Of a stretch of DNA of 64,000 nucleotides, positions 3,603 through 36,000 are shown in pieces. Every line of letters begins with the position of its first letter. Within the stretch, counting starts at the first letter, position 1. The stretch covers positions 496,001 through 560,000 of the forward strand of contig CATNEN010000002.1 in assembly GCA_950097015.1 (NCBI GenBank), read 5' to 3'. The notes under the pieces are model-generated. The model had not been told where the DNA came from and searched no databases. It worked only from the letters and a program-made list of their open reading frames with translations. This DNA is from Macrostomum hystrix. Lineage: Eukaryota; Animalia; Platyhelminthes. The translations under genes were made by a program, and so were the position numbers.

Positions 3603-4169
3603 TCAGAAGGCCCTACTAGCTCTTACTGTTCCACCACAGTCAAGCTCCTGCAGCTCCATCAGTTGATACTCTTCGCGCTCGTCCAGGACTAGCTCCCGGT
3701 CTCTGACGGGCATCGCTGTCGCCAGGGTGCTCTCGCAGCGGGTCAGGCAGTCCGCATCGCCAAGGCTGCTGTTTCCAGCGAAGCCGCGCTCTCTGAAGCC
3801 TCCGCCAACGTCTCTGCCACCAGCGCCGGCACTCCCTAGACGTCTCAACTCGGTGCCATGACGTCGATTCAAGTGAGCGCTGCTCTGGCGACGCGAGTCG
3901 AAGCCTTCGGCTGTGATTCTCCAGTCGAAGCAGCAGAAAATTCTCGCTAGAACTCGTTTGTAGCCGAGACGAAAGCGCTGCGACATGAAGTAGTACACCA
4001 CCGGGTTGGCGGTGGAGTTCGCAAAACCGATCAGGTGCAGCAGCACCATGGTGAAACCATAGTTGTGGTTGTACACATTCCTATTGAACAGACCAGCAAT
4101 GTTCACTGCAAACCAGGGTGTCCAGGAGATGAGGAACAGAGCTGCCACGACGATCATCATCTTAGCGAC
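3603..4169 (-). CDS. Neuropeptide-type class A GPCR, exon 3 (TM6, TM7, C-terminal tail)
   Basis: Acceptor attaccag|GTC. Translates VAKMMIVVAALFLISWTPW...FANSTANPVVYYFMSQRFR (NPxxY). Phase 0 junction with exon 2 gives KRK|VAKM. Confidence 0.9.
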   Translation of the reverse strand, partial: VAKMMIVVAALFLISWTPWFAVNIAGLFNRNVYNHNYGFTMVLLHLIGFANSTANPVVYYFMSQRFRLGYKRVLARIFCCFDWRITAEGFDSRRQSSAHLNRRHGTELRRLGSAGAGGRDVGGGFRERGFAGNSSLGDADCLTRCESTLATAMPVRDRELVLDEREEYQLMELQELDCGGTVRASRAF

Positions 4170-4384
4170 CTGGTAATTAGTAATTACGCTTGTAGATAGT
4201 GCTAGGGCTTCCAGACAGCATATTATGGATGTATCTTCGAGAATATCACTGTTTAACTGTCTTACGGTGCTTTCAGTTAACTTAATTTCTAGTGCCATTG
4301 TTGTTTATTCCTAAAATTTTTATCCTTAAAGAGAGAAAATTGAATAATTGGGTGATTATAAAATAATTAAATGAAAAAAACAAA

Positions 4385-5423: not shown

Positions 5424-8400
5424 GCTCTTGCTTCGATTCTACATTACACACTTTTGCTTCGATTCTACATTACACACTTTTGCTTCGATTCTACATTACA
5501 CACTTTTGCTTTGATTCTATATTACACTTTTGCTTTGATTCTATATTACACTTTTGCTTCGATTCTACATTACACACTTTTGCTTTGATTCTATATTACA
5601 CTTTTGCTTCGATTCTACATTACACACTTTTGCTTTGATTCTATATTACACTTTTGCTTTGATTCTATATTACACTTTTGCTTTGATTCTACATTACACA
5701 CTTTTGCTTCGATTCTACATTACACACTTTTGCTTTGATTCTACATTACACACTTTTGCTTTGATTCTATATTACAATTTTGCTTTGATTCTATATTACA
5801 CTTTTGCTTTGATTCTATATTACACTTTTGCTTTGATTCTACATTACACACTTTTGCTTCGATTCTACATTACACACTTTTGCTTTGATTCTATATTACA
5901 ATTTTGCTTTGATTCTATATTACACTTTTGCTTCGATTCTACATTACACACTTTTGCTTTGATTCTATATTACACACTTTTGCTTTGATTCTATATTACA
6001 CTTTTGCTTTGATTCTATATTACACTTTTGCTTCGATTCTACATTACACACTTTTGCTTTGATTCTATATTACACTTTTGCTTCGATTCTACATTACACA
6101 CTTTTGCTTTGATTCTATATTACACTTTTGCTTTGATTCTATATTACACTTTTGCTTCGATTCTACATTACACACTTTTGCTTTGATTCTATATTACACT
6201 TTTGCTTTGATTCTACATTACACACTTTTGCTTTGATTCTATATTACACTTTTGCTTCGATTCTACATTACACACTTTTGCTTTGATTCTATATTACACT
6301 TTTGCTTCGATTCTACATTACACACTTTTGCTTTGATTCTATATTACACTTTTGCTTTGATTCTATATTACACTTTTGCTTCGATTCTACATTACACACT
6401 TTTGCTTTGATTCTATATTACACTTTTGCTTCGATTCTACATTACACACTTTTGCTTTGATTCTATATTACACTTTTGCTTTGATTCTATATTACACTTT
6501 TGCTTTGATTCTACATTACACACTTTTGCTTCGATTCTACATTACACACTTTTGCTTTGATTCTACATTACACACTTTTGCTTTGATTCTATATTACAAT
6601 TTTGCTTTGATTCTATATTACACTTTTGCTTTGATTCTATATTACACTTTTGCTTTGATTCTACATTACACACTTTTGCTTCGATTCTACATTACACACT
6701 TTTGCTTTGATTCTATATTACAATTTTGCTTTGATTCTATATTACACTTTTGCTTCGATTCTACATTACACACTTTTGCTTTGATTCTATATTACAGTTT
6801 TGCTTTGATTCTATATTACACTTTTGCTTCGATTCTACATTACACACTTTTGCTTTGATTCTATATTACACTTTTGCTTTGATTCTATATTACACTTTTG
6901 CTTCGATTCTACATTACACACTTTTGCTTTGATTCTATATTACACTTTTGCTTCGATTCTACATTACACTTTTGCTTTGATTCTATATTACACTTTTGCT
7001 TCGATTCTACATTACACACTTTTGCTTTGATTCTATATTACACTTTTGCTTTGATTCTATATTACACTTTTGCTTTGATTCTACATTACACACTTTTGCT
7101 TCGATTCTACATTACACACTTTTGCTTTGATTCTACATTACACACTTTTGCTTTGATTCTATATTACAATTTTGCTTTGATTCTATATTACACTTTTGCT
7201 TTGATTCTATATTACACTTTTGCTTTGATTCTACATTACACACTTTTGCTTCGATTCTACATTACACACTTTTGCTTTGATTCTATATTACAATTTTGCT
7301 TTGATTCTATATTACACTTTTGCTTCGATTCTACATTACACACTTTTGCTTTGATTCTATATTACACACTTTTGCTTTGATTCTATATTACACTTTTGCT
7401 TTGATTCTATATTACACTTTTGCTTCGATTCTACATTACACACTTTTGCTTTGATTCTATATTACACTTTTGCTTCGATTCTACATTACACACTTTTGCT
7501 TTGATTCTATATTACACTTTTGCTTTGATTCTATATTACACTTTTGCTTCGATTCTACATTACACACTTTTGCTTTGATTCTACATTACACACTTTTGCT
7601 TCGATTCTACATTACACACTTTTGCTTTGATTCTATATTACACTTTTGCTTTGATTCTATATTACACTTTTGCTTCGATTCTATATTACAATTTTGCTTT
7701 GATTCTATATTACACTTTTGCTTTGATTCTATATTACACTTTTGCTTTGATTCTATATTACACTTTTGCTTCGATTCTATATTACAATTTTGCTTCGATT
7801 CTATATTACACTTTTGCTTTGATTCTATATTACAATTTTGCTTTGATTCTATATTACACTTTTGCTTCGATTCTACATTATACACTTTTGCTTTGATTCT
7901 ATATTACAATTTTGCTTTGATTCTATATTACACTTTTGCTTCGATTCTACATTACACACTTTTGCTTTGATTCTATATTACACTTTTGCTTTGATTCTAT
8001 ATTACACTTTTGCTTCGATTCTACATTACACACTTTTGCTTTGATTCTATATTACGTTCTTGCTTTGATTCTATATTGCACTTTTGCTTCGATTCTATAT
8101 TACACTTTTGCTTTGATTCTGTATTACACTTTTGCTTCGATTCTATATTACACTTTTGCTTTGATTCTATATTACACTTTTGCTTCGATTCTATATTACA
8201 CTTTTGCTTTGATTCTATATTGCACTTTTGCTTTGATTCTATATTACACTTTTGCTTCGATTCTACATTACACACTTTTGCTTTGATTCTATATTACACA
8301 CTTTTGCTTTGATTCTATATTACACTTTTGCTTTGATTCTATATTACACTTTTGCTTCGATTCTACATTACACACTTTTGCTTTGATTCTATATTACACT

Positions 8401-9970
8401 TTTGCTTCGATTCTATATTGCACTTTTGCTTTGATTCTATATTACACTTTTGCTTTGATTCTATATTACACTTTTGCTTCGATTCTACATTACACACTTT
8501 TGCTTTGATTCTATATTACACTTTTGCTTTGATTCTATATTACACTTTTGCTTCGATTCTACATTACACACTTTTGCTTTGATTCTATATTACACTTTTG
8601 CTTTGATTCTATATTACACTTTTGCTTCGATTCTATATTACAATTTTGCTTTGATTCTATATTACACTTTTGCTTTGATTCTATATTACACTTTTGCTTT
8701 GATTCTATATTACACTTTTGCTTCGATTCTATATTACAATTTTGCTTCGATTCTATATTACACTTTTGCTTTGATTCTATATTACAATTTTGCTTTGATT
8801 CTATATTACACTTTTGCTTCGATTCTACATTACACACTTTTGCTTTGATTCTATATTACAATTTTGCTTTGATTCTATATTACACTTTTGCTTCGATTCT
8901 ACATTACACACTTTTGCTTTGATTCTATATTACACTTTTGCTTTGATTCTATATTACACTTTTGCTTCGATTCTACATTACACACTTTTGCTTTGATTCT
9001 ATATTACGTTCTTGCTTTGATTCTATATTACACTTTTGCTTCGATTCTATATTACACTTTTGCTTTGATTCTGTATTACACTTTTGCTTCGATTCTATAT
9101 TACACTTTTGCTTTGATTCTATATTGCACTTTTGCTTTGATTCTATATTACACTTTTGCTTCGATTCTACATTACACACTTTTGCTTTGATTCTATATTA
9201 CACACTTTTGCTTTGATTCTATATTACACTTTTGCTTTGATTCTATATTACACTTTTGCTTCGATTCTACATTACACACTTTTGCTTTGATTCTATATTA
9301 CACTTTTGCTTCGATTCTATATTGCACTTTTGCTTTGATTCTATATTACACTTTTGCTTTGATTCTATATTACACTTTTGCTTCGATTCTACATTACACA
9401 CTTTTGCTTTGATTCTATATTACACACTTTTGCTTTGATTCTATATTACACTTTTGCTTTGATTCTATATTGCACTTTTGCTTTGATTCTATATTACAAT
9501 TTTGCTTTGATTCTATATTACACTTTTGCTTCGATTCTACATTACACACTTTTGCTTTGATTCTATATTACAATTTTGCTTTGATTCTATATTACACTTT
9601 TGCTTCGATTCTACATTACACACTTTTGCTTTGATTCTATATTACACTTTTGCTTTGATTCTATATTACACTTTTGCTTCGATTCTACATTACACACTTT
9701 TGCTTTGATTCTATATTACGTTCTTGCTTTGATTCTATATTACACTTTTGCTTCGATTCTATATTACACTTTTGCTTTGATTCTGTATTACACTTTTGCT
9801 TCGATTCTATATTACACTTTTGCTTTGATTCTATATTGCACTTTTGCTTTGATTCTATATTACACTTTTGCTTCGATTCTATATTACACTTTTGCTTCGA
9901 TTCCATATTACGTTCTTGCTTCGATTTCATATTACACTCTTGCTTCGATTCTATATTGCGCTTTGATTTA
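5424..9970. repeat. ~4.5-kb minisatellite of 24-bp and 26-bp variants (CTTTTGCTTTGATTCTATATTACA / CTTTTGCTTCGATTCTACATTACACA) in GPCR intron 1
   Basis: Tandem units read directly, with no unique spacers. Confidence 0.97.
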
Positions 9971-10790: not shown

Positions 10791-10833
10791 TTTAGTCTTG
10801 TTTCCAAGCAAAAAAAGCACCGAATTCGATCAC

Positions 10834-11222
10834 CTCTCGATGCAGATGACCACCAGGGTGAACAGGCTAGCAAACACCAGCAGCATCATGCAGAAGGTGA
10901 CGAACGAGCAGCCCAAACGGTCGAACAGTTTAGCGGCTACCGAGCAGGGACCCATGAGCTGCAAGCCCTTCAGCGGCAGCACCAGCGCCGCCGCCAGGAG
11001 GTCCGTGACCGCCAGGTTCAGCACGTAGCAGTTTGTCACAGTTCGCATCGTTCGGTGCAGGCAGATGGTGCAGACGACCATCAGGTTTCCAAAAAACATC
11101 AGCAGGCCGACGCTGATCCAGGCGACTGTCAGGCTGATCTTCACAGCCGGCAGCTGCAGCAGGTCCCAGTACACGGTTGCGTTCACCTCGTGACAGTTGG
11201 AGGTCGAAGCAGTTGGAGGCAT
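10834..11222 (-). CDS. Neuropeptide-type class A GPCR, exon 1 (N-term, TM1-TM3); full model join(11222-10834,5330-4910,4169-3603), 458 aa
   Basis: GN in TM1, MRTVTNCYVLNLAVTDLL in TM2, TM3 ending CIER. Donor AG|gtgatc is phase 2 and joins exon 2 in frame. Motifs resemble orexin/allatotropin, QRFP and CCK-type peptide receptors; the subfamily cannot be assigned by eye. Confidence 0.9.
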
Positions 11223-11754: not shown

Positions 11755-12760
11755 TTGAGCTCTTGCTTCCATTCTGGTTGCACCTCTTGCTTCGATTCTG
11801 GTTGGTTGCTTCGATTCTGGTTGGTTGCTTCGATTCTGGTTGGTTGCTTCGATTCTGGCAGTGCCTCTTGCTTCGATTCTGGTTGCAGCTCTTGCTTCGA
11901 TTCTGATTGTTTCAATTCGATTCTTGCTTCGATTCTGGTAGCAGCTCTTGCTTCGATTCTGGTCGGTTGCTTCGATTCTGGTTGGTTGCTTCGATTCTGG
12001 TTGGTTGCTTCGATTCTGGTTGGTTGCTTCGATTCTGGTTGGTTGCTTCGATTCTGGCAGTGCCTCTTGCTTCGATTCTGGTTGCAGCTCTTGCTTCGAT
12101 TCTGATTGTTTCAATTCGATTCTTGCTTCGATTCTGGTAGCAGCTCTTGCTTCGATTCTGGTCGGTTGCTTCGATTCTGATTGTTTCACTTCTATTCTTG
12201 CTTCGATCTTAGTTGTTTGCTTCGATTCTGGTTGGTTGCTTCGATTCTGGTTGGTTGCTTCGATTCTGGTTGGTTGCTTCGATTCTGGTTGGTTGCTTCG
12301 ATTCTGGTTGGTTGCTTCGATTCTGGTTGGTTGCTTCGATTCTGGTTGGTTGCTTCGATTCTGGTTGCAGCTCTTGCTTCGATTCTGGTTGTAGCTCTTT
12401 CTTAGATTCTGGTTGGTTGCTTCGATTCTGGTTGGTTGCTTTGATTCTGGTTGTGCCTCTTGCTTCAATTCTGGTTGCAGCTCTTGCTTCGTTCTGGTTG
12501 CAGCTCTTGCTTCGTTCTGGTTGCAGCTCTAGCTTCGATTCTGGTTGCAGCTCTTGCTTCGATTCTGGTTGCAGCTCTAGCTTCGATTCTGGTTGCAGCT
12601 CTTGCTTCGATTCCGGTTGCAGCTCTTGCTTCGTTCTGGTTGCAGCTCTTGCTTCTATTCTGTTTGCAGCTCTTGCTTCGATTCCGGTTGCAGCTCTTGC
12701 TTCGATTCCGGTTGCAGCTCTAGCTTCGATTCTGGTTAGTTGCTTCGATTCTTTGGATTC
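11755..12760. repeat. ~1-kb minisatellite built on TTGCTTCGATTCTGG (19-24-bp variants)
   Basis: Units such as TTGCTTCGATTCTGGTTGG and TTGCAGCTCTTGCTTCGATTCTGG; source of the PESKQ ORFs. Confidence 0.93.
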
Positions 12761-13267
12761 GGTGCTAGAGACTAAACTTCGCGGCAAAATAGCAAAGAGG
12801 TTCACCTGATTGACAGCCATAATTATGAAAATAAAAATAGTAAAGCTCTTAACGAATGGTTTCAGATTAATCAATGTACTAAACCGTACTGCTAGCAGCA
12901 GCTATTGAAATATTTACACTGCCAAGTTGCGATCAAATTCTGCTTGGAAAAGAACTCGAATCAAATTACTTTTTTATGCCTTGACGGTGCCTCTATATGC
13001 GAATGTAATTTAGTGTAGCATTTATATTTCTCCACTTTGTCTGTGCAAAAATATTCTTATCTAAAGCAGTAAATGTGTTGAACTGTTTCATCGAGTCAAA
13101 GTGTCTCTAGGTGGCTACTAATTAGTAGAACTTAGTGCGTGTGTTCAACCAGCAGAAACTAATTTTAGATTTACCGACTACAAGTAGATAAATACGTTTT
13201 TAACACCCTGCAAATAATTGGCAATTTAAGACGGAATATTTTGGATATAATATTCTCAATGAGGTGA

Positions 13268-13866
13268 ATTAGGAATTAGGTAAATTAGGGATTGGGTAAA
13301 TTAGGGATTGTGTAAATTAGGGATTGGGTAAATTAGGGATTGTGTAAATTAGGGATTGTGTAAATTAGGGATTGTGTAAATTAGGGATTGGGTAAATTAG
13401 GGATTGGGTAAATTAGGGATTGTGTAAATTAGGGATTGTGTAAATTAGGGATTGGGTAAATTAGGGATTGTGTAAATTAGGGATTGTGTAAATTAGGGAT
13501 TGTGTAAATTAGGGATTGGGTAAATTAGGGATTGTGTAAATTAGGGATTGTGTAAATTAGGGATTGGGTAAATTAGGGATTGTGTAAATTAGGGATTGGG
13601 TAAATTAGGGATTGTGTAAATTAGGGATTGTGTAAATTAGGAATTGTGTAAATTAGGGATTGTGTAAATTAGGGATTGTGTAAATTAGGGATTGTGTGAA
13701 TTAGGGATTGTGTGAATTAGGGATTGGATAAAATAGGGATTGGGTAAATTAGGGATTGGATAAAATAGGGATTGGGTAAATTAGGGATTGGGTAAATTAT
13801 GGATTGGGTAAATTAGGGATTGTGTGAATTAGGGATTGGGTAAATTAGGGATTGTGTAAATTAGGT
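13268..13866. repeat. 16-bp tandem repeat TAAATTAGGGATTG(T/G)G containing one TTAGGG per unit
   Basis: About 37 head-to-tail units read directly. Confidence 0.95.
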
Positions 13867-14361
13867 TAAAGTATTTTATAAAAGGTTTTACTGTTGAGTT
13901 TTTTTGGCCAAGAATTAACCACGTTTAACAATTATTTTATGGGCGTGAAATAAAAACTTTTATTTCTATTTCTATATAGTGAGTTGCTGAAAAATGAATT
14001 CGTGTCTAAACTAGATTTGGTAGTTGAAAACGAAATATGAAATTTCTTTGAAAAAGTGCCTTGATCGCCGGTTGGCATTCTGGGCTGCTGAATAGGAAAG
14101 GCTTTTTATCACCAACAGCAGCTCGCATAGACAGCGACTCATTGCTGTTAGTTGAAAAAGATTGTGCACACAAATGCTTGAGGTTGAGTTTTATGGCTTC
14201 GAGAGATACTGCACGCATAATCTGGTCATCATATTTGTTTAGTGTCGATGCTGTTTGTTAACTAAATATAGGCACCTTCTTGGGTCTGTGTTTGATCAGA
14301 TTTTCATATATCACCCGTTTGACCTACTCAATACCTGTGCAGTGGCAGTGGCAGTGGCACT

Positions 14362-17300
14362 GCTCTAGCTTCGATTCCTGCTCTAGCTACCATTCCTGCT
14401 CTATAGCTACCATTCCTGCTCTACCTACGATTCCTGCTCTAGTTACCATTCCTGCTCTAGCTACCATTCCTGCTCTATAGCTACCATTCCTGCTCTAGCT
14501 ACCATTCCTGCTCTAGCTACCATTCCTGCTCTAGCTACCATTCCTGCTCTAGCTACCATTCCTGCTCTAGCTACCATTCCTGCTCTAGCTACCATTCCTG
14601 CTCTAGCTACCATTCCTGCTCTAGCTACCATTCCTGCTCTAGCTACCATTCCTGCTCTACCTACGATTCCTGCTCTAGCTACCATTCCTGCTCTAGCTAC
14701 GATTCCTGCTCTAGCTACCATTCCTGCTCTACCTACGATTCCTGCTCTAGTTACCATTCCTGCTCTAGCTACGATTCCTGCTCTAGCTACCATTCCTGCT
14801 CTACCTACGATTCCTGCTCTAGTTACCATTCCTGCTCTAGCTACGATTCCTGCTCTAGCTACCATTCCTGCTCTACCTACGATTCCTGCTCTACCTACGA
14901 TTCCTGCTCTAGCTACCATTCCTGCTCTAGCTACCATTCCTGCTCTAGCTACCATTCCTGCTCTAGCTACGATTCCTGCTCTAGCTACCATTCCTGCTCT
15001 AGCTACCATTCCTGCTCTAGCTACCATTCCTGCTCTAGCTACCATTCCTGCTCTAGCTACCATTCCTGCTCTACCTACGATTCCTGCTCTAGTTACCATT
15101 CCTGCTCTAGCTACGATTCCTGCTCTAGCTACCATTCCTGCTCTACCTACGATTCCTGCTCTACCTACGATTCCTGCTCTAGCTACGATTCCTGCTTTAG
15201 CTTCGATTCATGCTCTACCTACGATTCCTGCTCTAGCTACCATTCCTGCTCTAGCTACCATTCCTGCTCTAGCTACCATTCCTGCTCTACCTACGATTCC
15301 TGCTCTAGTTACCATTCCTGCTCTAGCTACGATTCCTGCTTTAGCTACCATTCCTGCTCTACCTACGATTCCTGCTCTAGTTACCATTCCTGCTCTAGCT
15401 ACGATTCCTGCTCTATAGCTACCATTCCTGCTCTAGCTACCATTCCTGCTCTACCTACGATTCCTGCTCTAGTTACCATTCCTGCTCTAGCTACCATTCC
15501 TGCTCTATAGCTACCATTCCTGCTCTAGCTACCATTCCTGCTCTAGCTACGATTCCTGCTTTAGCTACCATTCCTGCTCTACCTACGATTCCTGCTCTAG
15601 TTACCATTCCTGCTCTAGCTACGATTCCTGCTCTATAGCTACCATTCCTGCTCTAGCTACCATTCCTGCTCTATAGCTACCATTCCTGCTCTACCTACGA
15701 TTCCTGCTCTAGTTACCATTCCTGCTCTAGCTACCATTCCTGCTCTATAGCTACCATTCCTGCTCTAGCTACCATTCCTGCTCTACCTACGATTCCTGCT
15801 CTAGCTACCATTCCTGCTCTATAGCTACGATTCCTGCTCTAGCTACCATTCCTGCTCTACCTACGATTCCTGCTCTAGCTACCATTCCTGCTCTATAGCT
15901 ACCATTCCTGCTCTAGCTACCATTCCTGCTCTACCTACGATTCCTGCTCTAGTTACCATTCCTGCTCTAGCTACGATTCCTGCTCTAGCTACCATTCCTG
16001 CTCTACCTACGATTCCTGCTCTACCTACCATTCCTGCTCTACCTACGATTCCTGCTCTACCTATGATTCCTGCTCTACCTACGATTCCTGCTCTATAGCT
16101 ACCATTCCTGCTCTAGCTACCATTCCTGCTCTATAGCTACCATTCCTGCTCTAGCTACCATTCCTGCTCTAGCTACCATTCCTGCTCTACCTACGATTCC
16201 TGCTCTAGCTACCATTCCTGCTCTATAGCTACCATTCCTGCTCTAGCTACCATTCCTGCTCTACCTACGATTCCTGCTCTAGTTACCATTCCTGCTCTAG
16301 CTACCATTCCTGCTCTATAGCTACCATTCCTGCTCTAGCTACCATTCCTGCTCTAGCTACGATTCCTGCTTTAGCTACCATTCCTGCTCTACCTACGATT
16401 CCTGCTCTAGTTACCATTCCTGCTCTAGCTACGATTCCTGCTCTATAGCTACCATTCCTGCTCTAGCTACGATTCCTGCTCTAGCTACGATTCCTGCTCT
16501 AGCTACCATTCCTGCTCTAGCTACCATTCCTGCTCTAGCTACCATTCCTGCTCTACCTACGATTCCTGCTCTAGCTACCATTCCTGCTCTACCTACCATT
16601 CCTGCTCTAGCTACCATTCCTGCTCTACCTACGATTCCTGCTCTAGTTACCATTCCTGCTCTAGCTTCGATTCCTGCTCTAGCTACCATTCCTGCTCTAG
16701 CTTCGATTCCTGCTCTAGCTACCATTCCTGCTCTACCTACGATTCCTGCTCTAGTTACCATTCCTGCTCTAGCTACCATTCCTGCTCTAGCTACCATTCC
16801 TGCTCTAGCTACCATTCCTGCTCTAGCTACCATTCCTGCTCTACCTACGATTCCTGCTCTAGTTACCATTCCTGCTCTAGCTACGATTCCTGCTTTAGCT
16901 ACCATTCCTGCTCTACCTACGATTCCTGCTCTAGTTACCATTCCTGCTCTAGCTACGATTCCTGCTCTATAGCTACCATTCCTGCTCTAGCTACCATTCC
17001 TGCTCTACCTACGATTCCTGCTCTAGTTACCATTCCTGCTCTAGCTACCATTCCTGCTCTATAGCTACCATTCCTGCTCTAGCTACCATTCCTGCTCTAG
17101 CTACGATTCCTGCTTTAGCTACCATTCCTGCTCTACCTACGATTCCTGCTCTAGTTACCATTCCTGCTCTAGCTACGATTCCTGCTCTATAGCTACCATT
17201 CCTGCTCTAGCTACGATTCCTGCTCTAGCTACCATTCCTGCTCTACCTACGATTCCTGCTCTAGCTACCATTCCTGCTCTAGCTACCATTCCTGCTCTAC

Positions 17301-20300
17301 CTACGATTCCTGCTCTAGCTACCATTCCTGCTCTAGCTACCATTCCTGCTCTAGCTACCATTCCTGCTCTACCTACGATTCCTGCTCTAGTTACCATTCC
17401 TGCTCTAGCTACGATTCCTGCTCTAGCTACCATTCCTGCTCTACCTACGATTCCTGCTCTACCTACGATTCCTGCTCTAGCTACGATTCCTGCTTTAGCT
17501 TCGATTCATGCTCTACCTACGATTCCTGCTCTAGCTACCATTCCTGCTCTAGCTACCATTCCTGCTCTAGCTACCATTCCTGCTCTACCTACGATTCCTG
17601 CTCTAGTTACCATTCCTGCTCTAGCTACGATTCCTGCTTTAGCTACCATTCCTGCTCTACCTACGATTCCTGCTCTAGTTACCATTCCTGCTCTAGCTAC
17701 GATTCCTGCTCTATAGCTACCATTCCTGCTCTAGCTACCATTCCTGCTCTACCTACGATTCCTGCTCTAGTTACCATTCCTGCTCTAGCTACCATTCCTG
17801 CTCTATAGCTACCATTCCTGCTCTAGCTACCATTCCTGCTCTAGCTACGATTCCTGCTTTAGCTACCATTCCTGCTCTACCTACGATTCCTGCTCTAGTT
17901 ACCATTCCTGCTCTAGCTACGATTCCTGCTCTATAGCTACCATTCCTGCTCTAGCTACGATTCCTGCTCTAGCTACGATTCCTGCTCTAGCTACCATTCC
18001 TGCTCTAGCTACCATTCCTGCTCTAGCTACCATTCCTGCTCTACCTACGATTCCTGCTCTAGCTACCATTCCTGCTCTACCTACCATTCCTGCTCTAGCT
18101 ACCATTCCTGCTCTACCTACGATTCCTGCTCTAGTTACCATTCCTGCTCTAGCTTCGATTCCTGCTCTAGCTACCATTCCTGCTCTAGCTTCGATTCCTG
18201 CTCTAGCTACCATTCCTGCTCTACCTACGATTCCTGCTCTAGTTACCATTCCTGCTCTAGCTACCATTCCTGCTCTAGCTACCATTCCTGCTCTAGCTAC
18301 CATTCCTGCTCTAGCTACCATTCCTGCTCTACCTACGATTCCTGCTCTAGTTACCATTCCTGCTCTAGCTACGATTCCTGCTTTAGCTACCATTCCTGCT
18401 CTACCTACGATTCCTGCTCTAGTTACCATTCCTGCTCTAGCTACGATTCCTGCTCTATAGCTACCATTCCTGCTCTAGCTACCATTCCTGCTCTACCTAC
18501 GATTCCTGCTCTAGTTACCATTCCTGCTCTAGCTACCATTCCTGCTCTATAGCTACCATTCCTGCTCTAGCTACCATTCCTGCTCTAGCTACGATTCCTG
18601 CTTTAGCTACCATTCCTGCTCTACCTACGATTCCTGCTCTAGTTACCATTCCTGCTCTAGCTACGATTCCTGCTCTATAGCTACCATTCCTGCTCTAGCT
18701 ACGATTCCTGCTCTAGCTACCATTCCTGCTCTACCTACGATTCCTGCTCTAGCTACCATTCCTGCTCTATAGCTACCATTCCTGCTCTAGCTACCATTCC
18801 TGCTCTACCTACGATTCCTGCTCTAGTTACCATTCCTGCTCTAGCTACGATTCCTGCTCTAGCTACCATTCCTGCTCTACCTACGATTCCTGCTCTACCT
18901 ATGATTCCTGCTCTACCTACGATTCCTGCTCTATAGCTACCATTCCTGCTCTAGCTACCATTCCTGCTCTACCTACGATTCCTGCTCTAGTTACCATTCC
19001 TGCTCTAGCTACCATTCCTGCTCTATAGCTACCATTCCTGCTCTAGCTACCATTCCTGCTCTAGCTACCATTCCTGCTCTACCTACGATTCCTGCTCTAC
19101 CTACGATTCCTGCTCTACCTACGATTCCTGCTCTAGCTACCATTCCTGCTCTATAGCTACCATTCCTGCTCTAGCTACCATTCCTGCTCTACCTACGATT
19201 CCTGCTCTAGTTACCATTCCTGCTCTAGCTACGATTCCTGCTCTAGCTACCATTCCTGCTCTACCTACGATTCCTGCTCTACCTACCATTCCTGCTCTAC
19301 CTACGATTCCTGCTCTACCTATGATTCCTGCTCTACCTACGATTCCTGCTCTATAGCTACCATTCCTGCTCTAGCTACCATTCCTGCTCTACCTACGATT
19401 CCTGCTCTAGTTACCATTCCTGCTCTAGCTACCATTCCTGCTCTATAGCTACCATTCCTGCTCTAGCTACCATTCCTGCTCTAGCTACCATTCCTGCTCT
19501 ACCTACGATTCCTGCTCTAGCTACCATTCCTGCTCTATAGCTACCATTCCTGCTCTAGCTACCATTCCTGCTCTACCTACGATTCCTGCTCTAGTTACCA
19601 TTCCTGCTCTAGCTACCATTCCTGCTCTATAGCTACCATTCCTGCTCTAGCTACCATTCCTGCTCTAGCTACGATTCCTGCTTTAGCTACCATTCCTGCT
19701 CTACCTACGATTCCTGCTCTAGTTACCATTCCTGCTCTAGCTACGATTCCTGCTCTATAGCTACCATTCCTGCTCTAGCTACCATTCCTGCTCTAGCTAC
19801 GATTCCTGCTCTAGCTACCATTCCTGCTCTATAGCTACCATTCCTGCTCTAGCTACCATTCCTGCTCTACCTACGATTCCTGCTCTAGCTACCATTCCTG
19901 CTCTACCTACGATTCCTGCTCTAGTTACCATTCCTGCTCTAGCTACGATTCCTGCTCTAGCTACCATTCCTGCTCTAGCTACCATTCCTGCTCTAGCTAC
20001 CATTCCTGCTCTAGCTACCATTCCTGCTCTAGCTACCATTCCTGCTCTACCTACGATTCCTGCTCTAGCTACCATTCCTGCTCTAGCTACCATTCCTGCT
20101 CTACCTACGATTCCTGCTCTAGCTACCATTCCTGCTCTATAGCTACCATTCCTGCTCTAGCTACCATTCCTGCTCTACCTACGATTCCTGCTCTAGTTAC
20201 CATTCCTGCTCTAGCTACGATTCCTGCTCTAGCTACCATTCCTGCTCTACCTACGATTCCTGCTCTACCTACCATTCCTGCTCTACCTACGATTCCTGCT

Positions 20301-20345
20301 CTACCTACGATTCCTGCTCTACCTACGATTCCTGCTCTAGCTACG
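14362..20345. repeat. ~6-kb minisatellite, 18-bp unit CTAGCTACCATTCCTGCT with sequence variants and a 20-bp variant
   Basis: Tandem units read directly. Identical ORF-track translations at 16429 and 17917 show an internal 1488-bp duplication. Confidence 0.97.
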
Positions 20346-20652
20346 ATTGTAGCTACGGTACTAAGCGGTGCTTTAACCTCTCCCTTTCTCTCTCCCAGTC
20401 TCTGCCTGCCTAAGTAAGTTGCATTCATTTTTTAGGTTACTGTTGGTCACATTTGTTACTATTTTATATGGGCTATTAACTTGGCGCTATAGGCAAATGG
20501 CCGTGGGACTTCTTGTCTTAGAAAATATTTTTCATTTGCATTTCTTTTTGTCAGTCACCTTGCAAACTTCTTTACTGTCCACTAGCTGAGTAGAAAGAAG
20601 ATGAGAAGTGCACAGCCAATGTCTCTGGGGTGGCTGCTGCAATTTTATTCGA

Positions 20653-20764: not shown

Positions 20765-21278
20765 ATGGTCAGCAAGACTGCAATGATACTGCTGTCAATC
20801 ATTGTCATTCTTAATCTCGTCTGTTCCGCGAAGGCTGCCTCTAACGACGAAGATTTTGGTGAGGAAATTTTCTGTTAATATCAGTAAAGACAATTGTTTG
20901 TAGACTTCAATTCTGATCTAAAATTTTCCATTCTGATCTGCAGATTCTGTTGAGGAGCCGGTTGACAAGGAATCAGTCGAGAAAGTTAATGACGCCGATG
21001 CTGCTGAGGACGATGATGTTGAAAAGTGAGATGAAATTTCACGCCAGAGATATTTAATCACTGAAGATTATAACTGGTATAACAAGCTAAAAGCCGATCT
21101 AACAATTGGGTCTAACAAACACTAAAATCGAAACCTGACCTGACGAGATAAAATTACCTGTTAATGCAAGTCTTTTTACAAATGCTACTAACAAGTAGTA
21201 CTTTTTCTATTATATTTCAGACGTTGCCGCTGGTCCTACAGCTCAGCCGTGGGTAGGTATGTGTATCGCTGCGACTGA
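20765..21278 (+). CDS. Secreted prepropeptide gene A, join(20765-20858,20944-21025,21221-21278), 77 aa; predicted mature peptide CRWSYSSAVGRYVYRCD
   Basis: MVSKTAMILLSIIVILNLVCSAKA (signal-like), acidic spacer (13 D/E of 27 residues in exon 2), KR, then a 17-mer with two Cys and a stop. Both introns are canonical GT-AG (phases 1 and 2). Same architecture as paralog B. Confidence 0.85.
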
Positions 21279-21724
21279 TTCCATTCAACGCGAAGCTTCA
21301 AGTCGGTTGTTCACGTTAAAAAACATTAAATAGAACACTTTAAACATTATTTATACAGTAGTTTTACTATTATTAGCACAACTTAAGCGATGTGTTCAAC
21401 CTTAGTCGATATTTTAGTGAATTCCACAAATTTTTGCTGTTTAAAATTGTAAAATTTTCGCTACGAATAAAAATAAATTATTTTTCTATAAATCTTTGGA
21501 CCTCAAACTCAAATAAAAACACTGCGAACGGCACAACAACCTCGAAATTAGTTTTTTTGTCAAACAAAGGCTGAGATATAGGTATTCAAATAATTTTGTT
21601 GATCTCAAAAAAGCCTGTCTTTAAACTTTCTTTACAGTGTCATTTTATTTCATTTTACATATTGTAGATATAATATCTAGAAATAGATAATATCTATCTG
21701 ATTCCGTGTGATAATAATATTGAT

Positions 21725-23069: not shown

Positions 23070-24199
23070 ATGAACAGTCTCACAGTTCTTCTGCTAATGT
23101 CTATGGCAGTGCTTCTGGTCTGCTCCGTACAGGCCGAGTCAAACCAGGATGATATTGGTGAGTGCAGAAACGTTAAGTTGAGTCTGTTTTAAACTTCTCT
23201 AATCATGTGAACTAGAATGGACCTCATTGTAACTTCAGATGTCGTAGAGGAACCCGCAGCTAATCAGGATTACGCTGAAGATGACGAGGCTGATGCCGAC
23301 AAAGCTGATGCTGGTGAAGATGTGACTGACGATATCGAGAAGTGAGTTGAAAATTATCTGTCTAACAGTGTCTAACACTAATAACTGCATCTAACAGGTT
23401 GATTATGGGTCTAACAGGTTGATTATGGGTCTAACAGGTTGATTATGGGTCTAACAGGTTGATTATGGGTCTAACAGGTTGATTATGGGTCTAACAGGTT
23501 GATTATGGGTCTAACAGGTTGATTATGGGTCTAACAGGTTGATTATGGGTCTAACAGGTTGATTAAGGGTCTAACAGGTTGATTATGGGTCTAACAGGTT
23601 GATTATGGGTCTAACAGGTTGATTATGGGTCTAACAGGTTGATTATGGGTCTAACAGGTTGATTATGGGTCTAACAGGTTGATTATGGGTCTAACAGGTT
23701 GATTATGGGTCTAACAGGTTGATTATGGGTCTAACAGGTTGATTATGGGTCTAACAGGTTGATTATGGGTCTAACAGGTTGATTATGGGTCTAACAGGTT
23801 GATTATGGGTCTAACAGGTTGATTATGGGTCTAACAGGTTGATTATGGGTCTAACAGGTTGATTATGGGTCTAACAGGTTGATTATGGGTCTAACAGGTT
23901 GATTATGGGTCTAACAGGTTGATTATGGGTCTAACAGGTTGATTATGGGTCTAACAGGTTGATTATGGGTCTAACAGGTTGATTATGGGTCTAACAGGTT
24001 GATTATGGGTCTAACAGGTTGATTATGGGTCTAACAGGTTGATTATGGGTCTAACGGGTTGATTATGGGTCTAACAGGTTGATTATGGGTCTAACAGGTT
24101 GATTTAACGTTTAAATAAGAGCAGTTTGCCTTGCATTTCAGAAAGTGCAAGTGGATCTACAGTGCCATCGCTGGCAGATACGTGCATGCCTGCAGCTGA
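23070..24199 (+). CDS. Secreted prepropeptide gene B, join(23070-23157,23239-23341,24142-24199), 82 aa; predicted mature peptide CKWIYSAIAGRYVHACS
   Basis: MNSLTVLLLMSMAVLLVCSVQA (signal-like), acidic spacer (16 D/E of 34 residues in exon 2), KK, then a 17-mer. Intron positions and phases are identical to gene A, and exon 3 has the same 58-nt coding length. Confidence 0.85.
23392..24104. repeat. 20-bp minisatellite GATTATGGGTCTAACAGGTT (~35 near-identical copies) in intron 2 of prepropeptide gene B
   Basis: Read directly; only two variant units seen. Confidence 0.97.
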
Positions 24200-30788: not shown

Positions 30789-30866
30789 CCTGAGACAGAC
30801 TTCTGTGTGATTTCCTTATTGCGAGTTTAATCGGCTAGGATATTTCTAAGATTCCTATATTAAACA

Positions 30867-31458
30867 GGTTTTCACTCCTAGATACTATAGGATTTCACTC
30901 CTAGATTCTTTAGGATTTCACTCCTAGATTCTTTAGGATTTCACTCCTAGATTCTATAGGATTTCACTCCTAGATTCTTTAGGATTTCACTCCTAGATTC
31001 TATAGGATTTCACTCCTAGATTCTATAGGATTTCACTCCTAGATTCTATAGGATTTCACTCCTAGATACTATGGGAATTCACTCCTAGATTCTATAGGAT
31101 TTCACTCCTAGATTCTTTAGGATTTCACTCCTAGATTCTATAGGATTTTACTCCTAGATTCTATAGGATTTTACTCCTAGATTCTATAGGATTTTACTCC
31201 TAGATTCTTTAGGATTTCACTCCTAGATTCTATAGGATTTCACTCCTAGATTCTATAGGATTTTACTCCTAGATTCTATAGGATTTCACTCCTAGATTCT
31301 TTAGGATTTCACTCCTAGATTCTATAGGATTTCACTCCTAGATTCTATAGGATTTCACTCCTAGATTCTATAGGATTTCACTCCTAGATTCTATAGGATT
31401 TCACTCCTAGATTCTATAGGATTTCACTCCTAGATTCTATAGGATTTTACTCCTATAT
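30867..31458. repeat. 23-bp minisatellite GGATTTCACTCCTAGATTCT(A/T)TA
   Basis: About 25 tandem units read directly, just downstream of the 29940 ORF. Confidence 0.95.
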
Positions 31459-32164: not shown

Positions 32165-32945
32165 ACTTGAGGGGTGTATCTTGACTGAAATGAGGTGGTT
32201 GTCTTGACAGGAGTGAGGTGGTTGTCTTGACTGAAGTGAGGTGTTTGTCTTTGCTGGAGTGAGGTGTTTGTCTTGGCTGGAGTGAGGTGTTTGTCTTGGC
32301 TGGAGTGAGGTGGTTGTCTTGACTGAAGTGAGGTGTTTGTCTTTGCTGGAGTGAGGTGTTTGTCTTGGCTGGAGTGAGGAGGTTGTCTTGACTGGAGTGG
32401 GGAGGTTGTCTTGACTGAAGTGAGGTGTTTGTCTTTGCTGGAGTGAGGTGTTTGTCTTGGCTGGAGTGAGGTGTTTGTCTTGGCTGGAGTGAGGTGGTTG
32501 TCTTGACTGAAGTGAGGTGTTTGTCTTTGCTGGAGTGAGGTGTTTGTCTTGGCTGGAGTGAGGTGGTTGTCTTGGCTGGAGTGGGGAGGTTGTCTTGACT
32601 GGAGTGAGGTGGTTGTCTTGACAGGAGTGAGGTGGTTGTCTTGACAGGAGTGAGGTGGTTGTCTTGACTGAAGTGAGGTGTTTGTCTTTGCTGGAGTGAG
32701 GTGTTTGTCTTGGCTGGAGTGAGGTGGTTGTCTTGACTGAAGTGAGGTGTTTGTCTTTGCTGGAGTGAGGTGTTTGTCTTGGCTGGAGTGAGGTGCTTGT
32801 CTTTGCTGGAGTGAGGTGTTTGTCTTGGCTGGAGTGAGGTGGTTGTCTTGGCTGGAGTGGGGAGGTTGTCTTGACTGGAGTGAGGTGGTTGTCTTGACAG
32901 GAGTGAGGTGGTTGTCTTGACAGGAGTGAGGTGGTTGTCTTCGCT
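32165..32945. repeat. 23-bp G/T-rich minisatellite (GGAGTGAGGTG(G/T)TTGTCTTG(G/A)CT variants)
   Basis: Tandem variants read directly; source of the 276-aa repetitive minus-strand ORF. Confidence 0.93.
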
Positions 32946-32957
32946 GGATTGAGGTTG

Positions 32958-35729
32958 ATGGTGCATAAAGTATGTGTCTACTAGGGTGAAATCTGTATTT
33001 TGAGTAGAACTCTAAGAGGCCTATAAAAACGTGTTAATCAGCGGTCTCAGCTTTCCGGCCCTGTCGTGTTCCTATTGCAGTCGCGCCTCTTGTCCCGCTT
33101 ACTCTTCCGCCCGCTGGGCGCATCCAATGTGTGGTGTAACGCAGCGGCCCTGCCAATCGCCTCGGCAATGCCGTGGAAAATCGAGCGGCGTCTGGCGGGT
33201 CACTCGCGCTGGCAGAATGTGCGCTCCGATAAGGAGGCCGGCATGGCCCAGAAGCGGTCACTGATGACCAATTATCTGCGCCTGTTGCGCAAGGCTATTA
33301 TCGATGGCAACGGTAGCACCAGCATGCAGGCCAATGTGCACCTGAAGGCGGTGTTCGACCGAGCCAAGTCTGACAATGTGCCGCTGAAAACTTTAGAAAA
33401 GATGCTGGCCTCCAAGTCCAAAGATGGAGTCGAGCCTTATGTGGTGGAGGTGCGTGGCCGAGGCGGCATTTGTCTACTGGTCCAGTGCAACAGCCCCGCT
33501 AAGACCAAGAGCAGGCAGGATGTGAGTGGGGATTTCACTGCCTTCAATCTGCCTTTTGCTTGAATTGGGATATCATGATGGTTCTAGGCTATTGGGATAT
33601 ACTCGTAGTGGGATAATAATTGGCTATTGTTATAATAATAATAATAATTGCAGGAGGGCTGCGGGCAATGGCACATCATTCGGTGACACTAGACCCGCAG
33701 CCAGCGAGGAGGCAATTCTGCACATCTCGCTGACTCCTGAGCACACACGCACACAGATACTGTACGCAGGCACACGCTCACACAGGTGTGTACATCTGCT
33801 CTGACTTTCTCATCGTCAGGCAGTGTACACTCTCACTGTTCATTGGAGGTTGGCCCTCATGGGCGTAAAATATGCACGACAAGCCCCCAAGCCTTCTCTC
33901 AGCGGCTGCTCCCCATGTAAATGTGGCCTCGCCGTGGAATCGAACTTAGGGACCTTGGTGCGAGAGGCAAACGCGTTAACCGCTCTGCCACTCACCCCCA
34001 GGCTATTTAAATGTCGTGGGATAATAAGAAACGGGATAGATAAGACACAGGAGAGATTAGAAAGGGAAGAGATGAGACACGGGAGAGATTAGAAAGGGAG
34101 AGATAAGACACGGGAGAGATTAGAAAGGGATTATATAAGACAGGATGCTATAGGTGTCGTAAGGGGCAACGGGCCGGATTTTAAGCTTCGAGGGCCGCAT
34201 CTGGCATCCGGGCCAGAGTTTGCCGACCCCAGGGTTTAAGGCTTAGATGCTTGCTATTTTTCCCTTTGAAGTTAAAGTGATTAGCAAATGGAAAATTGGG
34301 AATGAGGATGACGAAGTTAAAAATAAACAGTTTCAACGTCCTCTAAGATTTGGAAAGAAAATATTTTAACTTGACATTTTATTACGAGCTAGAGCTATGC
34401 ATAATTATAAAGTTGCATGTTATGCCTAGTAGGCTTGCATAGGGTATAAAATAGTGTGGATTAACTTTGCATTTGGGGGTTAAAATTCCTTAATTTCGAT
34501 TATATTTTGGGTAGGAATAGTTATTGTAAATTGTATTCTAAATTGCTTCATAATTTATTATAATTCCATGATATATTTAGGGTACCACAATATTCGGAAA
34601 TATTATCCAATTTTATCAGGCATTCGCATCACAAGAAGTGTTTTACGTGACAGTTTTTTTAAGTCCAAACAAATTTGGGGAATAGAACGAAAGTTGTTTA
34701 AAAAAAATTTTGTTGTGATTGTGGGCGTCTTGGGTGAGGCGAGTTTGTAGGTTGAGGTGGGTGTCTGAGGTGAGTTGGTTGTCTGGGTTGAGGTTAGTGT
34801 CTAGATTGAGTTGGTTGTCTGGGATGAGGTGGGTGTCTGGGGTGAGGTGGGTGTCTAGGTTGAGTTGGTTGTCTGGGATGAGGTGGGTGTCTGGGATGAG
34901 GTGGGTGTCTGGGGTGAGGTGGGTGTCTAGATTGAGGTGAGTGTCTCGGGTGAGGTGGGTGTCTAGGTTGAGTTGGTTGTCTGGGGTGAGGTGGGTGTCT
35001 GGGGTGAGGTGGGTCTCTAGGATGAGGTGGGTGTCTAGGTTGAGTTGGTTGTCTGGGATGAGGTGGGTGTCTGGGGTGAGGTGGGTGTCTGGGATGAGGT
35101 GGGTGTCTAGGATGAGGTGGGTGTCTGGGGTGAGTTGGTTGTCTGGGATGAGGTGGGTGTCTGGGATGAGGTGGGTGTCTGGGGTGAGGTGGGTGTCTAG
35201 GTTGAGGTGGGTGTCGAATTATTAATTCATTCTAAGCTAAAAAAATAAGCTAAAATCTCATTAAGTCATGCTTGCCCTTTTACCGCAGATTACAAATCAA
35301 GTGAAACGCATTGGTCTGGAAGTGGCTGGCATAGATTCATCAGTTAGTAAAAGCTTCTTCGATAAGAAGGGCAGCGTTGAGGTGTCGCACGATCCAGTGA
35401 AACTGTCAAACTTGGATCAGGCCACTGAGCTGGCGTTGGAGTTCGACTGCGCTGATGTTCGCTTCGAGGACAGCGACAGCGCCGATGGCGGCGGCGGCAT
35501 TTTCGTGTTCGAATGCGCTCCAACCTCCGTTGACCTGGTAGCCGAGGGTCTTCGGTCTTCCGGCCTGTCTGTCCTGGATGCATCTGTGCGCTACGAGCCA
35601 TTCGAACGAGTCGAATTAGATTCGGAAACTTTGCAATTGTTAAACGAATTAGTTGATCGAATACGCGAACAAGTCGACGGAGTTGTTCAGGTGTTTGACA
35701 ACGTCACAGAGGTTGGCAGCAATTGCTGA
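32958..35729 (+). CDS. TACO1: TACO1 / YebC-PmpR family protein, model join(32958-32969,33081-33521,35289-35729), 297 aa
   Basis: AGHSRWQNVR..K corresponds to the family AGHxKW motif; EVRGRGGICLLV, FFDKKG and a C-terminal D-V-V-Q-V-F-D-N motif are also present. Donor GAT|gtgagt and acceptor ttaccgcag|ATT are in frame. The 12-nt first exon (ATGGTGCATAAA|gtatgt) is inferred and less certain. Confidence 0.85.
33646..33999 (-). mobile_element. tRNA-derived SINE family B, full length, in TACO1 intron
   Basis: Reverse complement head GGTGAGTGGCAGAGCGGTTAACGCG (A-box) and GTTCGATTCC (B-box); (TTA)n tail; possible 7-bp TSD GGCTATT on both sides. Confidence 0.85.
34035..34140. repeat. Short purine-rich ~29-bp tandem repeat (GATAAGACACGGGAGAGATTAGAAAGGGA)
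   Basis: Three to four imperfect copies. Confidence 0.7.
34151..34231. mobile_element. hAT-like terminal remnant
   Basis: Reverse complement TGGGGTCGGCAAACTCTGGCCCGGATGCCAGATGCGGCCC resembles the typical hAT non-autonomous end (CAGGGGTCGGCAAAC...GGCCCGCGGGCC...GCGGCCC). No TSD seen. Confidence 0.45.
34728..35215. repeat. 18-bp G-rich minisatellite GGG(G/A)TGAGGTGGGTGTCT in TACO1 intron
   Basis: Tandem variants read directly. Confidence 0.93.
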
Positions 35730-35794
35730 GATTGTCTGTGTTCGCTGTTTGCTACACAAAGCTTTGTATGTCAGATAATTTGTGTGGGTGCGCG

Positions 35795-36000
35795 GGGTGG
35801 GGTGGATGCACGAAGTGGGGTGGGTACGCGGAGTGGGGTTGGTACCCGGAGTGGGGTGGGTACGCGGAGTGGGGTTGGTACGCGGAGTGGGGTGGGTACG
35901 CGGAGTGGGGTTGGTACGCGAAGTGGGGTGGGTACACGTAGTGTGGTTTGTAGGCGGAGTGGGGTGGGTACGCGGAGTGGGTGGGTGTGCGGAGTAGGAT
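35795..36000. repeat. 18-bp G-rich minisatellite GGAGTGGGGT(G/T)GGTACGC downstream of TACO1 stop
   Basis: About 10 tandem units. Confidence 0.9.

What the first reader, a model, noticed from the sequence alone, without database searches (positions are those of the whole stretch)
21221..21278. Mature peptide pattern predicts an aromatic beta-hairpin
With C1-C16 closed, antiparallel register (i+j=17) pairs W3 with Y14 (H14 in B), Y5 with Y12 and S6 with R11 around a four-residue turn ending in the conserved G10. The aromatic pairs and the disulfide would fall on one face. Both peptides carry about +2 net charge, offset by the acidic propiece. Established: single-disulfide beta-hairpin antimicrobial peptides such as arenicin and thanatin have this layout. 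A weaker alternative is a hormone-like role, since GRYVYRC echoes the GRVYRPC of melanin-concentrating hormone, although the ring size differs. Both functions are inference.
Basis: inference. Interest (0 to 1): 0.75.

Follow-up and report, generated by a model that had tools for sequence, protein, structure and literature searches.

The report
Orphan flatworm cyclic-peptide gene pair
The stretch is the last exon of a small, apparently real gene (with a diverged twin 2.3 kb away) for a secreted 17-residue, one-disulfide peptide whose sequence fits a beta-hairpin well, but nothing yet shows whether it kills microbes, signals, or does something else.

Summary
Window 21221-21278 is exon 3 of a three-exon gene (A). 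It encodes K-R followed by a 17-residue peptide (C1...C16-D17) and a stop. A diverged tandem twin (B, 23070-24199) has the same exon layout and intron phases.

Nine of the 17 mature residues are identical: C1, W3, Y5, S6, G10, R11, Y12, V13 and C16. Silent sites are saturated. These are the only two copies in the 220-Mb genome.

The hairpin reading is geometrically self-consistent. A C1-C16 bond forces the i+j=17 register. A four-residue loop ending in G10 puts the disulfide and the W3/Y14 and Y5/Y12 pairs at non-hydrogen-bonded sites on one face. The same four cluster positions and a similar loop occur in the classic GB1 41-56 and HP7 hairpins.

It remains inference.

Function is open. The antimicrobial reading passes the loose sequence criteria of the class, but the charge is only +2 and amphipathicity is not conserved in B. 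The MCH and somatostatin-type readings fail their defining features.

No relatives were found, but the searches open to exon-sized pieces were weak. Another first-stage note on this window (s1-384922) flags the same gene pair.

The parts
20765..20858 (+). Gene A exon 1: start codon (context GACAAAATGG), signal peptide, first acidic residues; ends in phase 1
   Evidence: n/h/c regions and A-K-A|A fit the -3,-1 rule (inference)
20944..21025 (+). Gene A exon 2: acidic propiece, ends with ..D-D-D-V-E and two bases of the Lys codon (phase 2)
21221..21278 (+). Gene A exon 3 (the finding): last base of Lys, Arg, 17-residue peptide, TGA
21225..21275 (+). Predicted mature peptide A, 17 aa, C1-C16 ring, net +2, oxidised monoisotopic mass 2067.904
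21325..21471 (+). Candidate polyadenylation signals of A (ATTAAA at 21325, AATAAA at 21466)
23070..23157 (+). Gene B exon 1: start codon, signal peptide, first acidic residues; phase 1
23239..23341 (+). Gene B exon 2: acidic propiece ending ..T-D-D-I-E and two bases of Lys (phase 2)
23390..24104 (.). 20-bp x 36 minisatellite filling intron 2 of B; its TCTAACA seed is also in intron 2 of A (21098-21117)
24142..24199 (+). Gene B exon 3: last base of Lys, Lys, 17-residue peptide, TGA
24146..24196 (+). Predicted mature peptide B, 17 aa, C1-C16 ring, net +2, oxidised monoisotopic mass 1924.908

Best explanation
The stretch is the last exon of a real three-exon gene. That gene and its old tandem twin encode secreted precursors of 77 and 82 residues.

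Proposed steps:
1. A signal peptide is removed.
2. A very acidic spacer is cut off at a conserved [V/I]-E-K-[R/K] site that straddles the exon 2/3 junction. The cut is probably made by a prohormone-convertase-type enzyme in a regulated secretory cell, because Lys-Lys is not a furin site.
3. The only two cysteines left close a 16-residue ring.

The ring is best read as a beta-hairpin with strands 1-6 and 11-16 and a four-residue loop 7-10, with the invariant Gly10 at the left-handed position. This puts the disulfide, W3-Y/H14 and Y5-Y12 at non-hydrogen-bonded sites on one face. That aromatic face, together with the G-R-Y-V block, is what the two copies keep, so it is probably the surface that binds the target.

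I lean towards a specific extracellular target (a signalling or otherwise receptor-binding peptide) over membrane lysis.

Shown: exons, splice sites, phases, paralogy, which residues are conserved, and the absence of any family match. Inferred: signal cleavage, dibasic cleavage, disulfide, hairpin and function.
For: **Gene model.** Canonical GT-AG introns with phases 1 and 2 in both copies, an A at -3 before each ATG, and poly(A) signals downstream.

**Paralogy and constraint.**
- Collinear exon matches.
- pS 0.64-0.86 against pN 0.21-0.37 in all three exons.
- No DNA-level similarity in flanks or introns, except the shared TCTAACA seed in intron 2.
- Only these two copies in the genome.

**Conserved residues.** Nine invariant mature residues, including both Cys and Gly10.

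**Register statistics.**

**Hairpin model peptides.**
- GB1 41-56 is a 16-residue hairpin. Its cluster W43/Y45/F52/V54 falls at positions 3, 5, 12 and 14 of the same numbering.
- HP7 carries the loop N-P-A-T-G-K, compared with S-S-A-V-G-R here.
- Both sequences were checked. Their structural roles are recalled established knowledge.

**Against lysis.** Charge +2, and a strand hydrophobic moment at 180 degrees of 0.71/0.80 in A but 0.28/0.16 in B.
Against: - There is no transcript or protein evidence. Exon-1 open frames of A and B found nothing in the 5.8-billion-protein collection. A control GPCR exon from the same window also had no hit above 48% identity, so that blank says little.
- No structure prediction was possible.
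- The loops S-A-V-G and A-I-A-G are poor turn formers by classical propensities, apart from Gly.
- With only two sequences, face-specific conservation (5 of 6 against 3 of 6 positions) is anecdotal.
- The mature peptide is no more conserved than the propiece, so the usual neuropeptide signature is absent too.
- There is no amidation signal.
Confidence: 0.5

Rival explanations
1. Beta-hairpin antimicrobial or host-defence peptide. The cationic, aromatic hairpin binds and disrupts microbial membranes, and the acidic propiece keeps it inert until cleavage.
For: - It meets the sequence criteria of the class in PMC13001179: 11-25 aa, charge +1 to +8, and a Cys pair at least 3 residues apart.
- In A, Arg outnumbers Lys 3 to 0, and the aromatic and cationic faces are separate.
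- The signal / acidic spacer / KR / C-terminal peptide layout is that of many defence-peptide precursors, such as those of amphibian skin (recalled knowledge).
- The genes form a tandem pair.
- Other first-stage notes place cGAS-like and Ig-type receptor genes nearby. I did not check them.
Against: - The charge is only +2, and A ends in Asp.
- His14 in B and Asp17 in A are residues the class lacks.
- The amphipathic pattern is lost in B.
- The mature region is not hypervariable relative to the signal and propiece.
- No BRICHOS domain, so it is not arenicin-like.
- The propiece charge of -14 and -18 is far beyond neutralisation.
- No family of this class is known from flatworms.
Confidence: 0.25
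2. Orthologue of a known cyclic neuropeptide family (MCH type, or somatostatin / allatostatin-C / urotensin-II type) acting on the matching GPCR.
For: - A small precursor with a single disulfide-ring peptide at the extreme C-terminus after a dibasic site, as in the 88-residue starfish MCH-type precursor.
- Three exons with the ring on the last one, as in spiralian SSRP-like genes.
- G10, R11 and C16 align without gaps with human MCH (sequence checked).
- C-x-W-x-Y recalls the urotensin core.
Against: - The ring has 16 residues, against 10 or 12 in MCH types.
- R/K rather than M/I follows Cys1.
- There is no basic residue penultimate to Cys2 in A.
- The intron phases are 1 and 2, not 0 and 1, and there is no W-K motif.
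- Pfam found nothing at E up to 10, including Pro-MCH, Somatostatin and Urotensin_II.
Confidence: 0.04
3. A secreted cyclic peptide that is not a stable hairpin. It could be a flexible or partly helical loop, or a dimer of two chains linked by intermolecular disulfides.
For: - The central segments S-A-V and A-I-A favour helix or strand rather than turn (classical propensities, recalled).
- Two-Cys peptides can form homodimers or heterodimers, as noted for starfish candidates.
- Two co-located paralogues could pair with each other.
Against: - The aromatic pattern is in exact register with the disulfide.
- Gly is invariant at the one loop position that needs a positive phi angle.
- Beta-branched and aromatic residues are dense in both arms.
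Confidence: 0.3
4. Gland product used outside the body (seminal-fluid, adhesive, repellent or prey-directed peptide) rather than an internal signal or an antimicrobial.
For: It is a lineage-restricted, small, secreted, tandemly duplicated gene with no relatives found. Such genes are common among flatworm reproductive and gland transcripts (recalled knowledge).
Against: There is no expression data of any kind. Purifying rather than diversifying selection is seen between the copies.
Confidence: 0.15
5. Not functional genes: chance open frames or decaying relics.
For: No transcript, annotation or homologue was found. The precursors are very short.
Against: Two copies with saturated silent sites still keep all of the following:
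- the start codon and signal peptide;
- both splice junctions and phases;
- the dibasic site;
- both Cys and the stop position.
Confidence: 0.07

Closest known systems
GB1 41-56 hairpin and its designed relatives (trpzip4, HP7)
   Same: Both are 16-residue units in the i+j=17 register. The stabilising side chains sit at positions 3, 5, 12 and 14 (W, Y, F, V in GB1; W, Y, Y, Y/H here). The loop is four residues (six by the 4:6 count). HP7's optimised loop N-P-A-T-G-K has Ala, a beta-branched residue, Gly and a basic residue where A has A8, V9, G10 and R11 (sequences).
   Different: This is a structural analogy only, with no homology (PDB sequence search blank). GB1 has no disulfide and is a bacterial protein fragment. 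Here a terminal disulfide closes the hairpin.
Single-disulfide beta-hairpin antimicrobial peptides (arenicin, thanatin, lactoferricin B, bactenecin)
   Same: Short, cationic, one ring-closing disulfide, aromatic and beta-branched strands, released from the C-terminus of a precursor.
   Different: Charge is +2, against about +6. Arenicin has an 18-residue ring with a two-residue turn and a BRICHOS precursor. No BRICHOS domain is present here. No flatworm family is known. Activity is untested.
MCH-type precursors (vertebrates, echinoderms, hemichordates)
   Same: Short precursor, with the Cys-ring peptide at the extreme C-terminus after a dibasic site. G-R lies in the ring.
   Different: The ring size and the residues after Cys1 and before Cys2 do not fit. 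There is no Pfam match.
Somatostatin / allatostatin-C / urotensin-II-like (SSRP-like) genes of molluscs and annelids
   Same: Three exons: signal peptide on exon 1, and the disulfide loop on exon 3.
   Different: Intron phases are 1 and 2 rather than 0 and 1. There is no W-K motif. The ring is much larger. The whole mature peptide lies on exon 3.
Amphibian skin peptide precursors (dermaseptin/brevinin superfamily)
   Same: Signal peptide, 20-40 residue acidic spacer ending ..E-K-R, and a single C-terminal peptide. Some have a C-terminal disulfide loop (recalled knowledge).
   Different: The lineage is unrelated. In those families the signal and spacer are conserved and the mature peptide is hypervariable, whereas here all three parts diverge alike.

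Membership tests
Beta-hairpin antimicrobial peptide class (criteria of PMC13001179) | Length 11-25 residues | tested here: met
   17 residues in both
Beta-hairpin antimicrobial peptide class (criteria of PMC13001179) | Net cationic charge +1 to +8 | tested here: met
   +2 in both, at the low end
Beta-hairpin antimicrobial peptide class (criteria of PMC13001179) | At least one Cys pair separated by three or more residues | tested here: met
   C1 and C16, 14 residues between them
Beta-hairpin antimicrobial peptide class (criteria of PMC13001179) | Arg enriched over Lys; His, Gln, Glu and Asp nearly absent | tested here: inconclusive
   A has 3 Arg and 0 Lys, but Asp17. B has 1 Arg and 1 Lys, and His14
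Beta-hairpin antimicrobial peptide class (criteria of PMC13001179) | Experimental evidence of the hairpin (CD/NMR), of the disulfide (MS) and of antimicrobial activity | not testable with these tools
   The review requires experiment beyond modelling.
Arenicin-type (BRICHOS-precursor) peptides | BRICHOS domain in the propiece | tested here: not met
   Pfam scan of all exon pieces found none. The propiece is only 34-41 residues
MCH-type neuropeptide | Peptide at the C-terminus of the precursor after a dibasic site, with a Cys pair | tested here: met
   K-R or K-K, then C1...C16 and a stop
MCH-type neuropeptide | Ring of 10 (vertebrate) or 12 (ambulacrarian) residues | tested here: not met
   16-residue ring
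MCH-type neuropeptide | Met or Ile after the first Cys; Lys or Arg penultimate to the second Cys | tested here: not met
   R2/K2 after Cys1. Position 14 is Tyr (A) or His (B)
MCH-type neuropeptide | Match to Pfam Pro-MCH | tested here: not met
   No Pfam family at E up to 10 for the exon-3 frames. Power is low for 26-28 residues
Somatostatin / ASTC / urotensin-like (SSRP-like) | Three exons separated by a phase-0 and a phase-1 intron | tested here: not met
   Three exons, but phases 1 and 2 in both copies
Somatostatin / ASTC / urotensin-like (SSRP-like) | W-K motif inside the disulfide loop | tested here: not met
   W-S in A and W-I in B

The most novel reading that the evidence does not exclude
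A and B are the first beta-hairpin host-defence peptides of a flatworm. They would be made from a short acidic-spacer precursor without BRICHOS, adding a sixth phylum and a new precursor type to a class with only about 25 natural families.
Probability: 0.2. Interest if true: 0.55.

Novelty: new member of a known kind. Interest (0 to 1): 0.3.

Why it matters
If expressed, this is a lineage-restricted, unannotated family of disulfide-cyclised secreted peptides in a regenerating flatworm model genus, and it is small enough to synthesise and test at once.

A natural 17-mer carrying the GB1-type aromatic cluster plus a closing disulfide would be a compact, stable scaffold. It would also give either a new ligand for receptor deorphanisation in flatworms or the first hairpin defence peptide of the phylum.

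As it stands it is a well-formed candidate with no functional evidence.

Tried and rejected
1. **Word search of the 5.8-billion-protein collection.** I used the exon-1 open frames of A and B, chosen so that 77-82-residue precursors fall in the length window. No candidate came back. A control with the 326-aa GPCR exon gave a best hit of only 48% identity, so the collection does not hold this genome's proteins and the blank is weak.

2. **Pfam and PDB.** Pfam at E up to 10 and PDB sequence search on every exon piece gave nothing meaningful.

3. **Own-genome searches.** Searches with exons 1 and 3 of both copies, and with a degenerate W-x-Y-x4-G-R-Y-V pattern, found only A and B. The extra exact hit is a CLK-type kinase motif, and the counts equal the reversed-pattern control.

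4. **Metagenome scans.** The back-translated N-terminal half found nothing confirmed. None had Cys1, a dibasic site and a stop together.
   - One look-alike, L114 (..D-I-E-K-E-C-K-R-W..G-R-Y-V-H-I-C-stop), lies between genes on a dense bacterial-type contig.
   - Its G-G-G-R-Y-V is a Shine-Dalgarno box plus a start codon read out of frame. I rejected it as chance.

6. **Steps I left out.**
So full-length searches (word search, HMMER, Atlas, exact-sequence look-ups), a whole-precursor fold and a signal-peptide predictor were left out.
   - The only pieces of 30 residues or more are a signal peptide and a low-complexity acidic spacer, which cannot test for relatives of the mature peptide.

7. 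**Literature.** Motif strings gave no relevant paper. They are absent from the planarian prohormone supplements of PMC2953531.

8. **Neighbouring GPCRs as possible receptors.** One is melatonin/aminergic-like and the other weakly peptide-receptor-like. Neither is somatostatin/MCH-like by its best PDB matches. There is no case for a ligand-receptor cluster.

Full report
**What is there**

The window is eukaryotic. It has short GT-AG introns and many minisatellites. The best named relative of a neighbouring receptor gene is from the annelid Capitella. Earlier notes of this scan call the genome a Macrostomum flatworm. I did not verify that. It is not human.

The finding's 58 bases are exon 3 of a three-exon gene, A:
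- Exon 1, 20765-20858, encodes a start codon in a good context, a hydrophobic signal peptide ending C-S-A-K-A, and the first acidic residues.
- Exon 2, 20944-21025, encodes an acidic spacer.
- Exon 3, 21221-21278, completes a Lys codon, then gives Arg, a 17-residue peptide and TGA.
- The donors are GTGAG and the acceptors TGCAG and TTCAG. The phases are 1 and 2.

A second gene, B, lies 1.8 kb downstream (23070-23157, 23239-23341, 24142-24199). It has the same phases and the same split codons, GAT and AAA. It ends in K-K followed by a 17-residue peptide. The precursors are 77 and 82 residues by exon arithmetic.

**Is it more than chance?**

- The three exon pieces of A find those of B collinearly, at E 2.3e-4, 0.19 and 1.6e-5 within the window.
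- Silent sites are saturated (pS 0.64-0.86), while replacement differences are 0.21-0.37 in every exon.
- Flanks and introns no longer align.
- One relic remains. Intron 2 of A holds TCTAACA-ATTGGG-TCTAACA, the seed of the 20-bp unit that has expanded to 36 copies in intron 2 of B.
- An old duplicate pair that still keeps the start, signal peptide, both junctions, the [V/I]-E-K-[R/K] site, both Cys and the stop position is very unlikely to be noise.
- The 220-Mb genome holds no third copy.

Every stated residue and pairing is correct, and the net charge is +2 in both. The propieces carry -14 and -18, so 'offset' understates them.

Nine mature positions are invariant: C1, W3, Y5, S6, G10, R11, Y12, V13 and C16.

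**The hairpin**

A C1-C16 bond in an antiparallel hairpin fixes i+j=17, which allows only an even-numbered loop.
- A two-residue turn would be A8-V9 or I8-A9, which are poor turn residues.
- A four-residue loop 7-10 puts the invariant Gly at the fourth loop position, which in such loops adopts a left-handed conformation (established hairpin statistics, recalled).
- It makes 6-11 the hydrogen-bonded closing pair. Then 5-12, 3-14 and 1-16 are all non-hydrogen-bonded pairs on one face. Those are the sites preferred both by cross-strand disulfides and by aromatic pairs, as in the trpzip peptides.

This is the layout of the classic autonomous hairpin GB1 41-56. It is also 16 residues long, and its W43, Y45, F52, V54 cluster falls at positions 3, 5, 12 and 14. 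Its stabilised derivative HP7 has the loop N-P-A-T-G-K, compared with S-S-A-V-G-R in A. Both sequences were confirmed.

For A's composition, two aromatic pairs in register occur in 2% of shuffles, and both on the disulfide face in 0.3%. This is a post-hoc test. B matches only if His counts.

The aromatic face is identical at 5 of 6 positions between A and B, the other face at 3 of 6, and the loop at 1 of 4.

All this makes the hairpin the most economical fold, and I put it at a little over one half. AlphaFold needs 30 residues, and the only longer sequence is the spliced precursor, which I left unjoined. So no prediction was made.

**Function**

*Antimicrobial reading.* The peptides pass the published loose sequence criteria for the class. 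Against it:
- They sit at its lowest charge.
- They contain Asp and His, which the class avoids.
- They lack a BRICHOS precursor.
- They lose the cationic/aromatic two-face pattern in B. The strand moment at 180 degrees is 0.71/0.80 in A but 0.28/0.16 in B.
- The mature region is not hypervariable.
- No such family is known from flatworms.

*Hormone reading.*
- MCH-type features (ring 10-12, M/I after Cys1, a basic residue penultimate to Cys2) are not met.
- SSRP-like features (phases 0 and 1, a W-K motif) are not met.
- Pfam finds nothing.
- The general design is shared with those families: a small precursor with one C-terminal ring peptide after a dibasic site. A Lys-Lys site points to convertases of regulated secretion rather than furin (inference).

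I lean to a specific binding role, but the margin is small. A gland product used outside the body remains possible.

**Relatives**

None were found in the word-indexed protein collection, Pfam, PDB, two metagenome scans, or the planarian prohormone supplements.

These searches are weak for exon-sized pieces. A control shows the protein collection lacks close relatives even of a 326-residue receptor exon from the same window. The apparent absence of relatives is therefore not established.

**Verdict**

The hairpin is plausible and sharpened, but untested. The antimicrobial role is open, and the MCH link is rejected. This is a probable new, lineage-restricted member of the familiar class of convertase-released, disulfide-cyclised secreted peptides. 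Interest is moderate to low until expression is shown.

Noticed in passing
window 23390-24104 and 21098-21117: The 20-bp x 36 minisatellite in intron 2 of gene B shares its TCTAACA...GGG-TCTAACA seed with a 13-bp-spaced doublet in intron 2 of gene A. Two of the only five TCTAACA heptamers outside B's intron lie there. The seed therefore predates the duplication and expanded in one copy only.
   Followed up: partly
window 14360-20348: A 6-kb array of an 18-bp unit (about 329 copies) ends about 400 bp upstream of gene A's start codon. It produces long artefactual open frames (M-V-A-R-A-G repeats) on the minus strand.
   Followed up: no
window 3603-4298 and 10830-11222 (minus strand), with 5428-9964 between: Two exons of a rhodopsin-family GPCR. 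The first exon is closest to neuromedin-U, NPY, kisspeptin and NPFF receptors in PDB, at weak E-values of about 1e-9. The exons are separated by an intron holding a 4.5-kb 24-bp minisatellite. This peptide-receptor-like gene lies 10 kb from the peptide genes. No link is shown.
   Followed up: partly
window 41662-42642 (minus strand): A large GPCR exon (326 aa) whose best PDB matches are melatonin and aminergic receptors. Its best relatives in the 5.8-billion-protein collection are only 42-48% identical (Capitella among them), so this genome's proteins seem absent from that collection.
   Followed up: partly
window 50880-51366 versus 63041-63527, and 45288-45314 versus 55830-55856: Identical short translated matches recur at offsets of about 12.2 kb and 10.5 kb. 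This indicates recent segmental duplication in the 45-64 kb part of the window, the region another note describes as a paired Ig-receptor arrangement.
   Followed up: no
window 5428-9964, 11787-12737, 13267-13865, 30866-31455, 32179-32955, 34721-35995, 38648-39670: Minisatellites with periods of 16-31 bp are unusually dense. Together with the two arrays at 14360-20348 and 23390-24104 they make up about 15 kb, roughly a quarter, of the 64-kb window.
   Followed up: no
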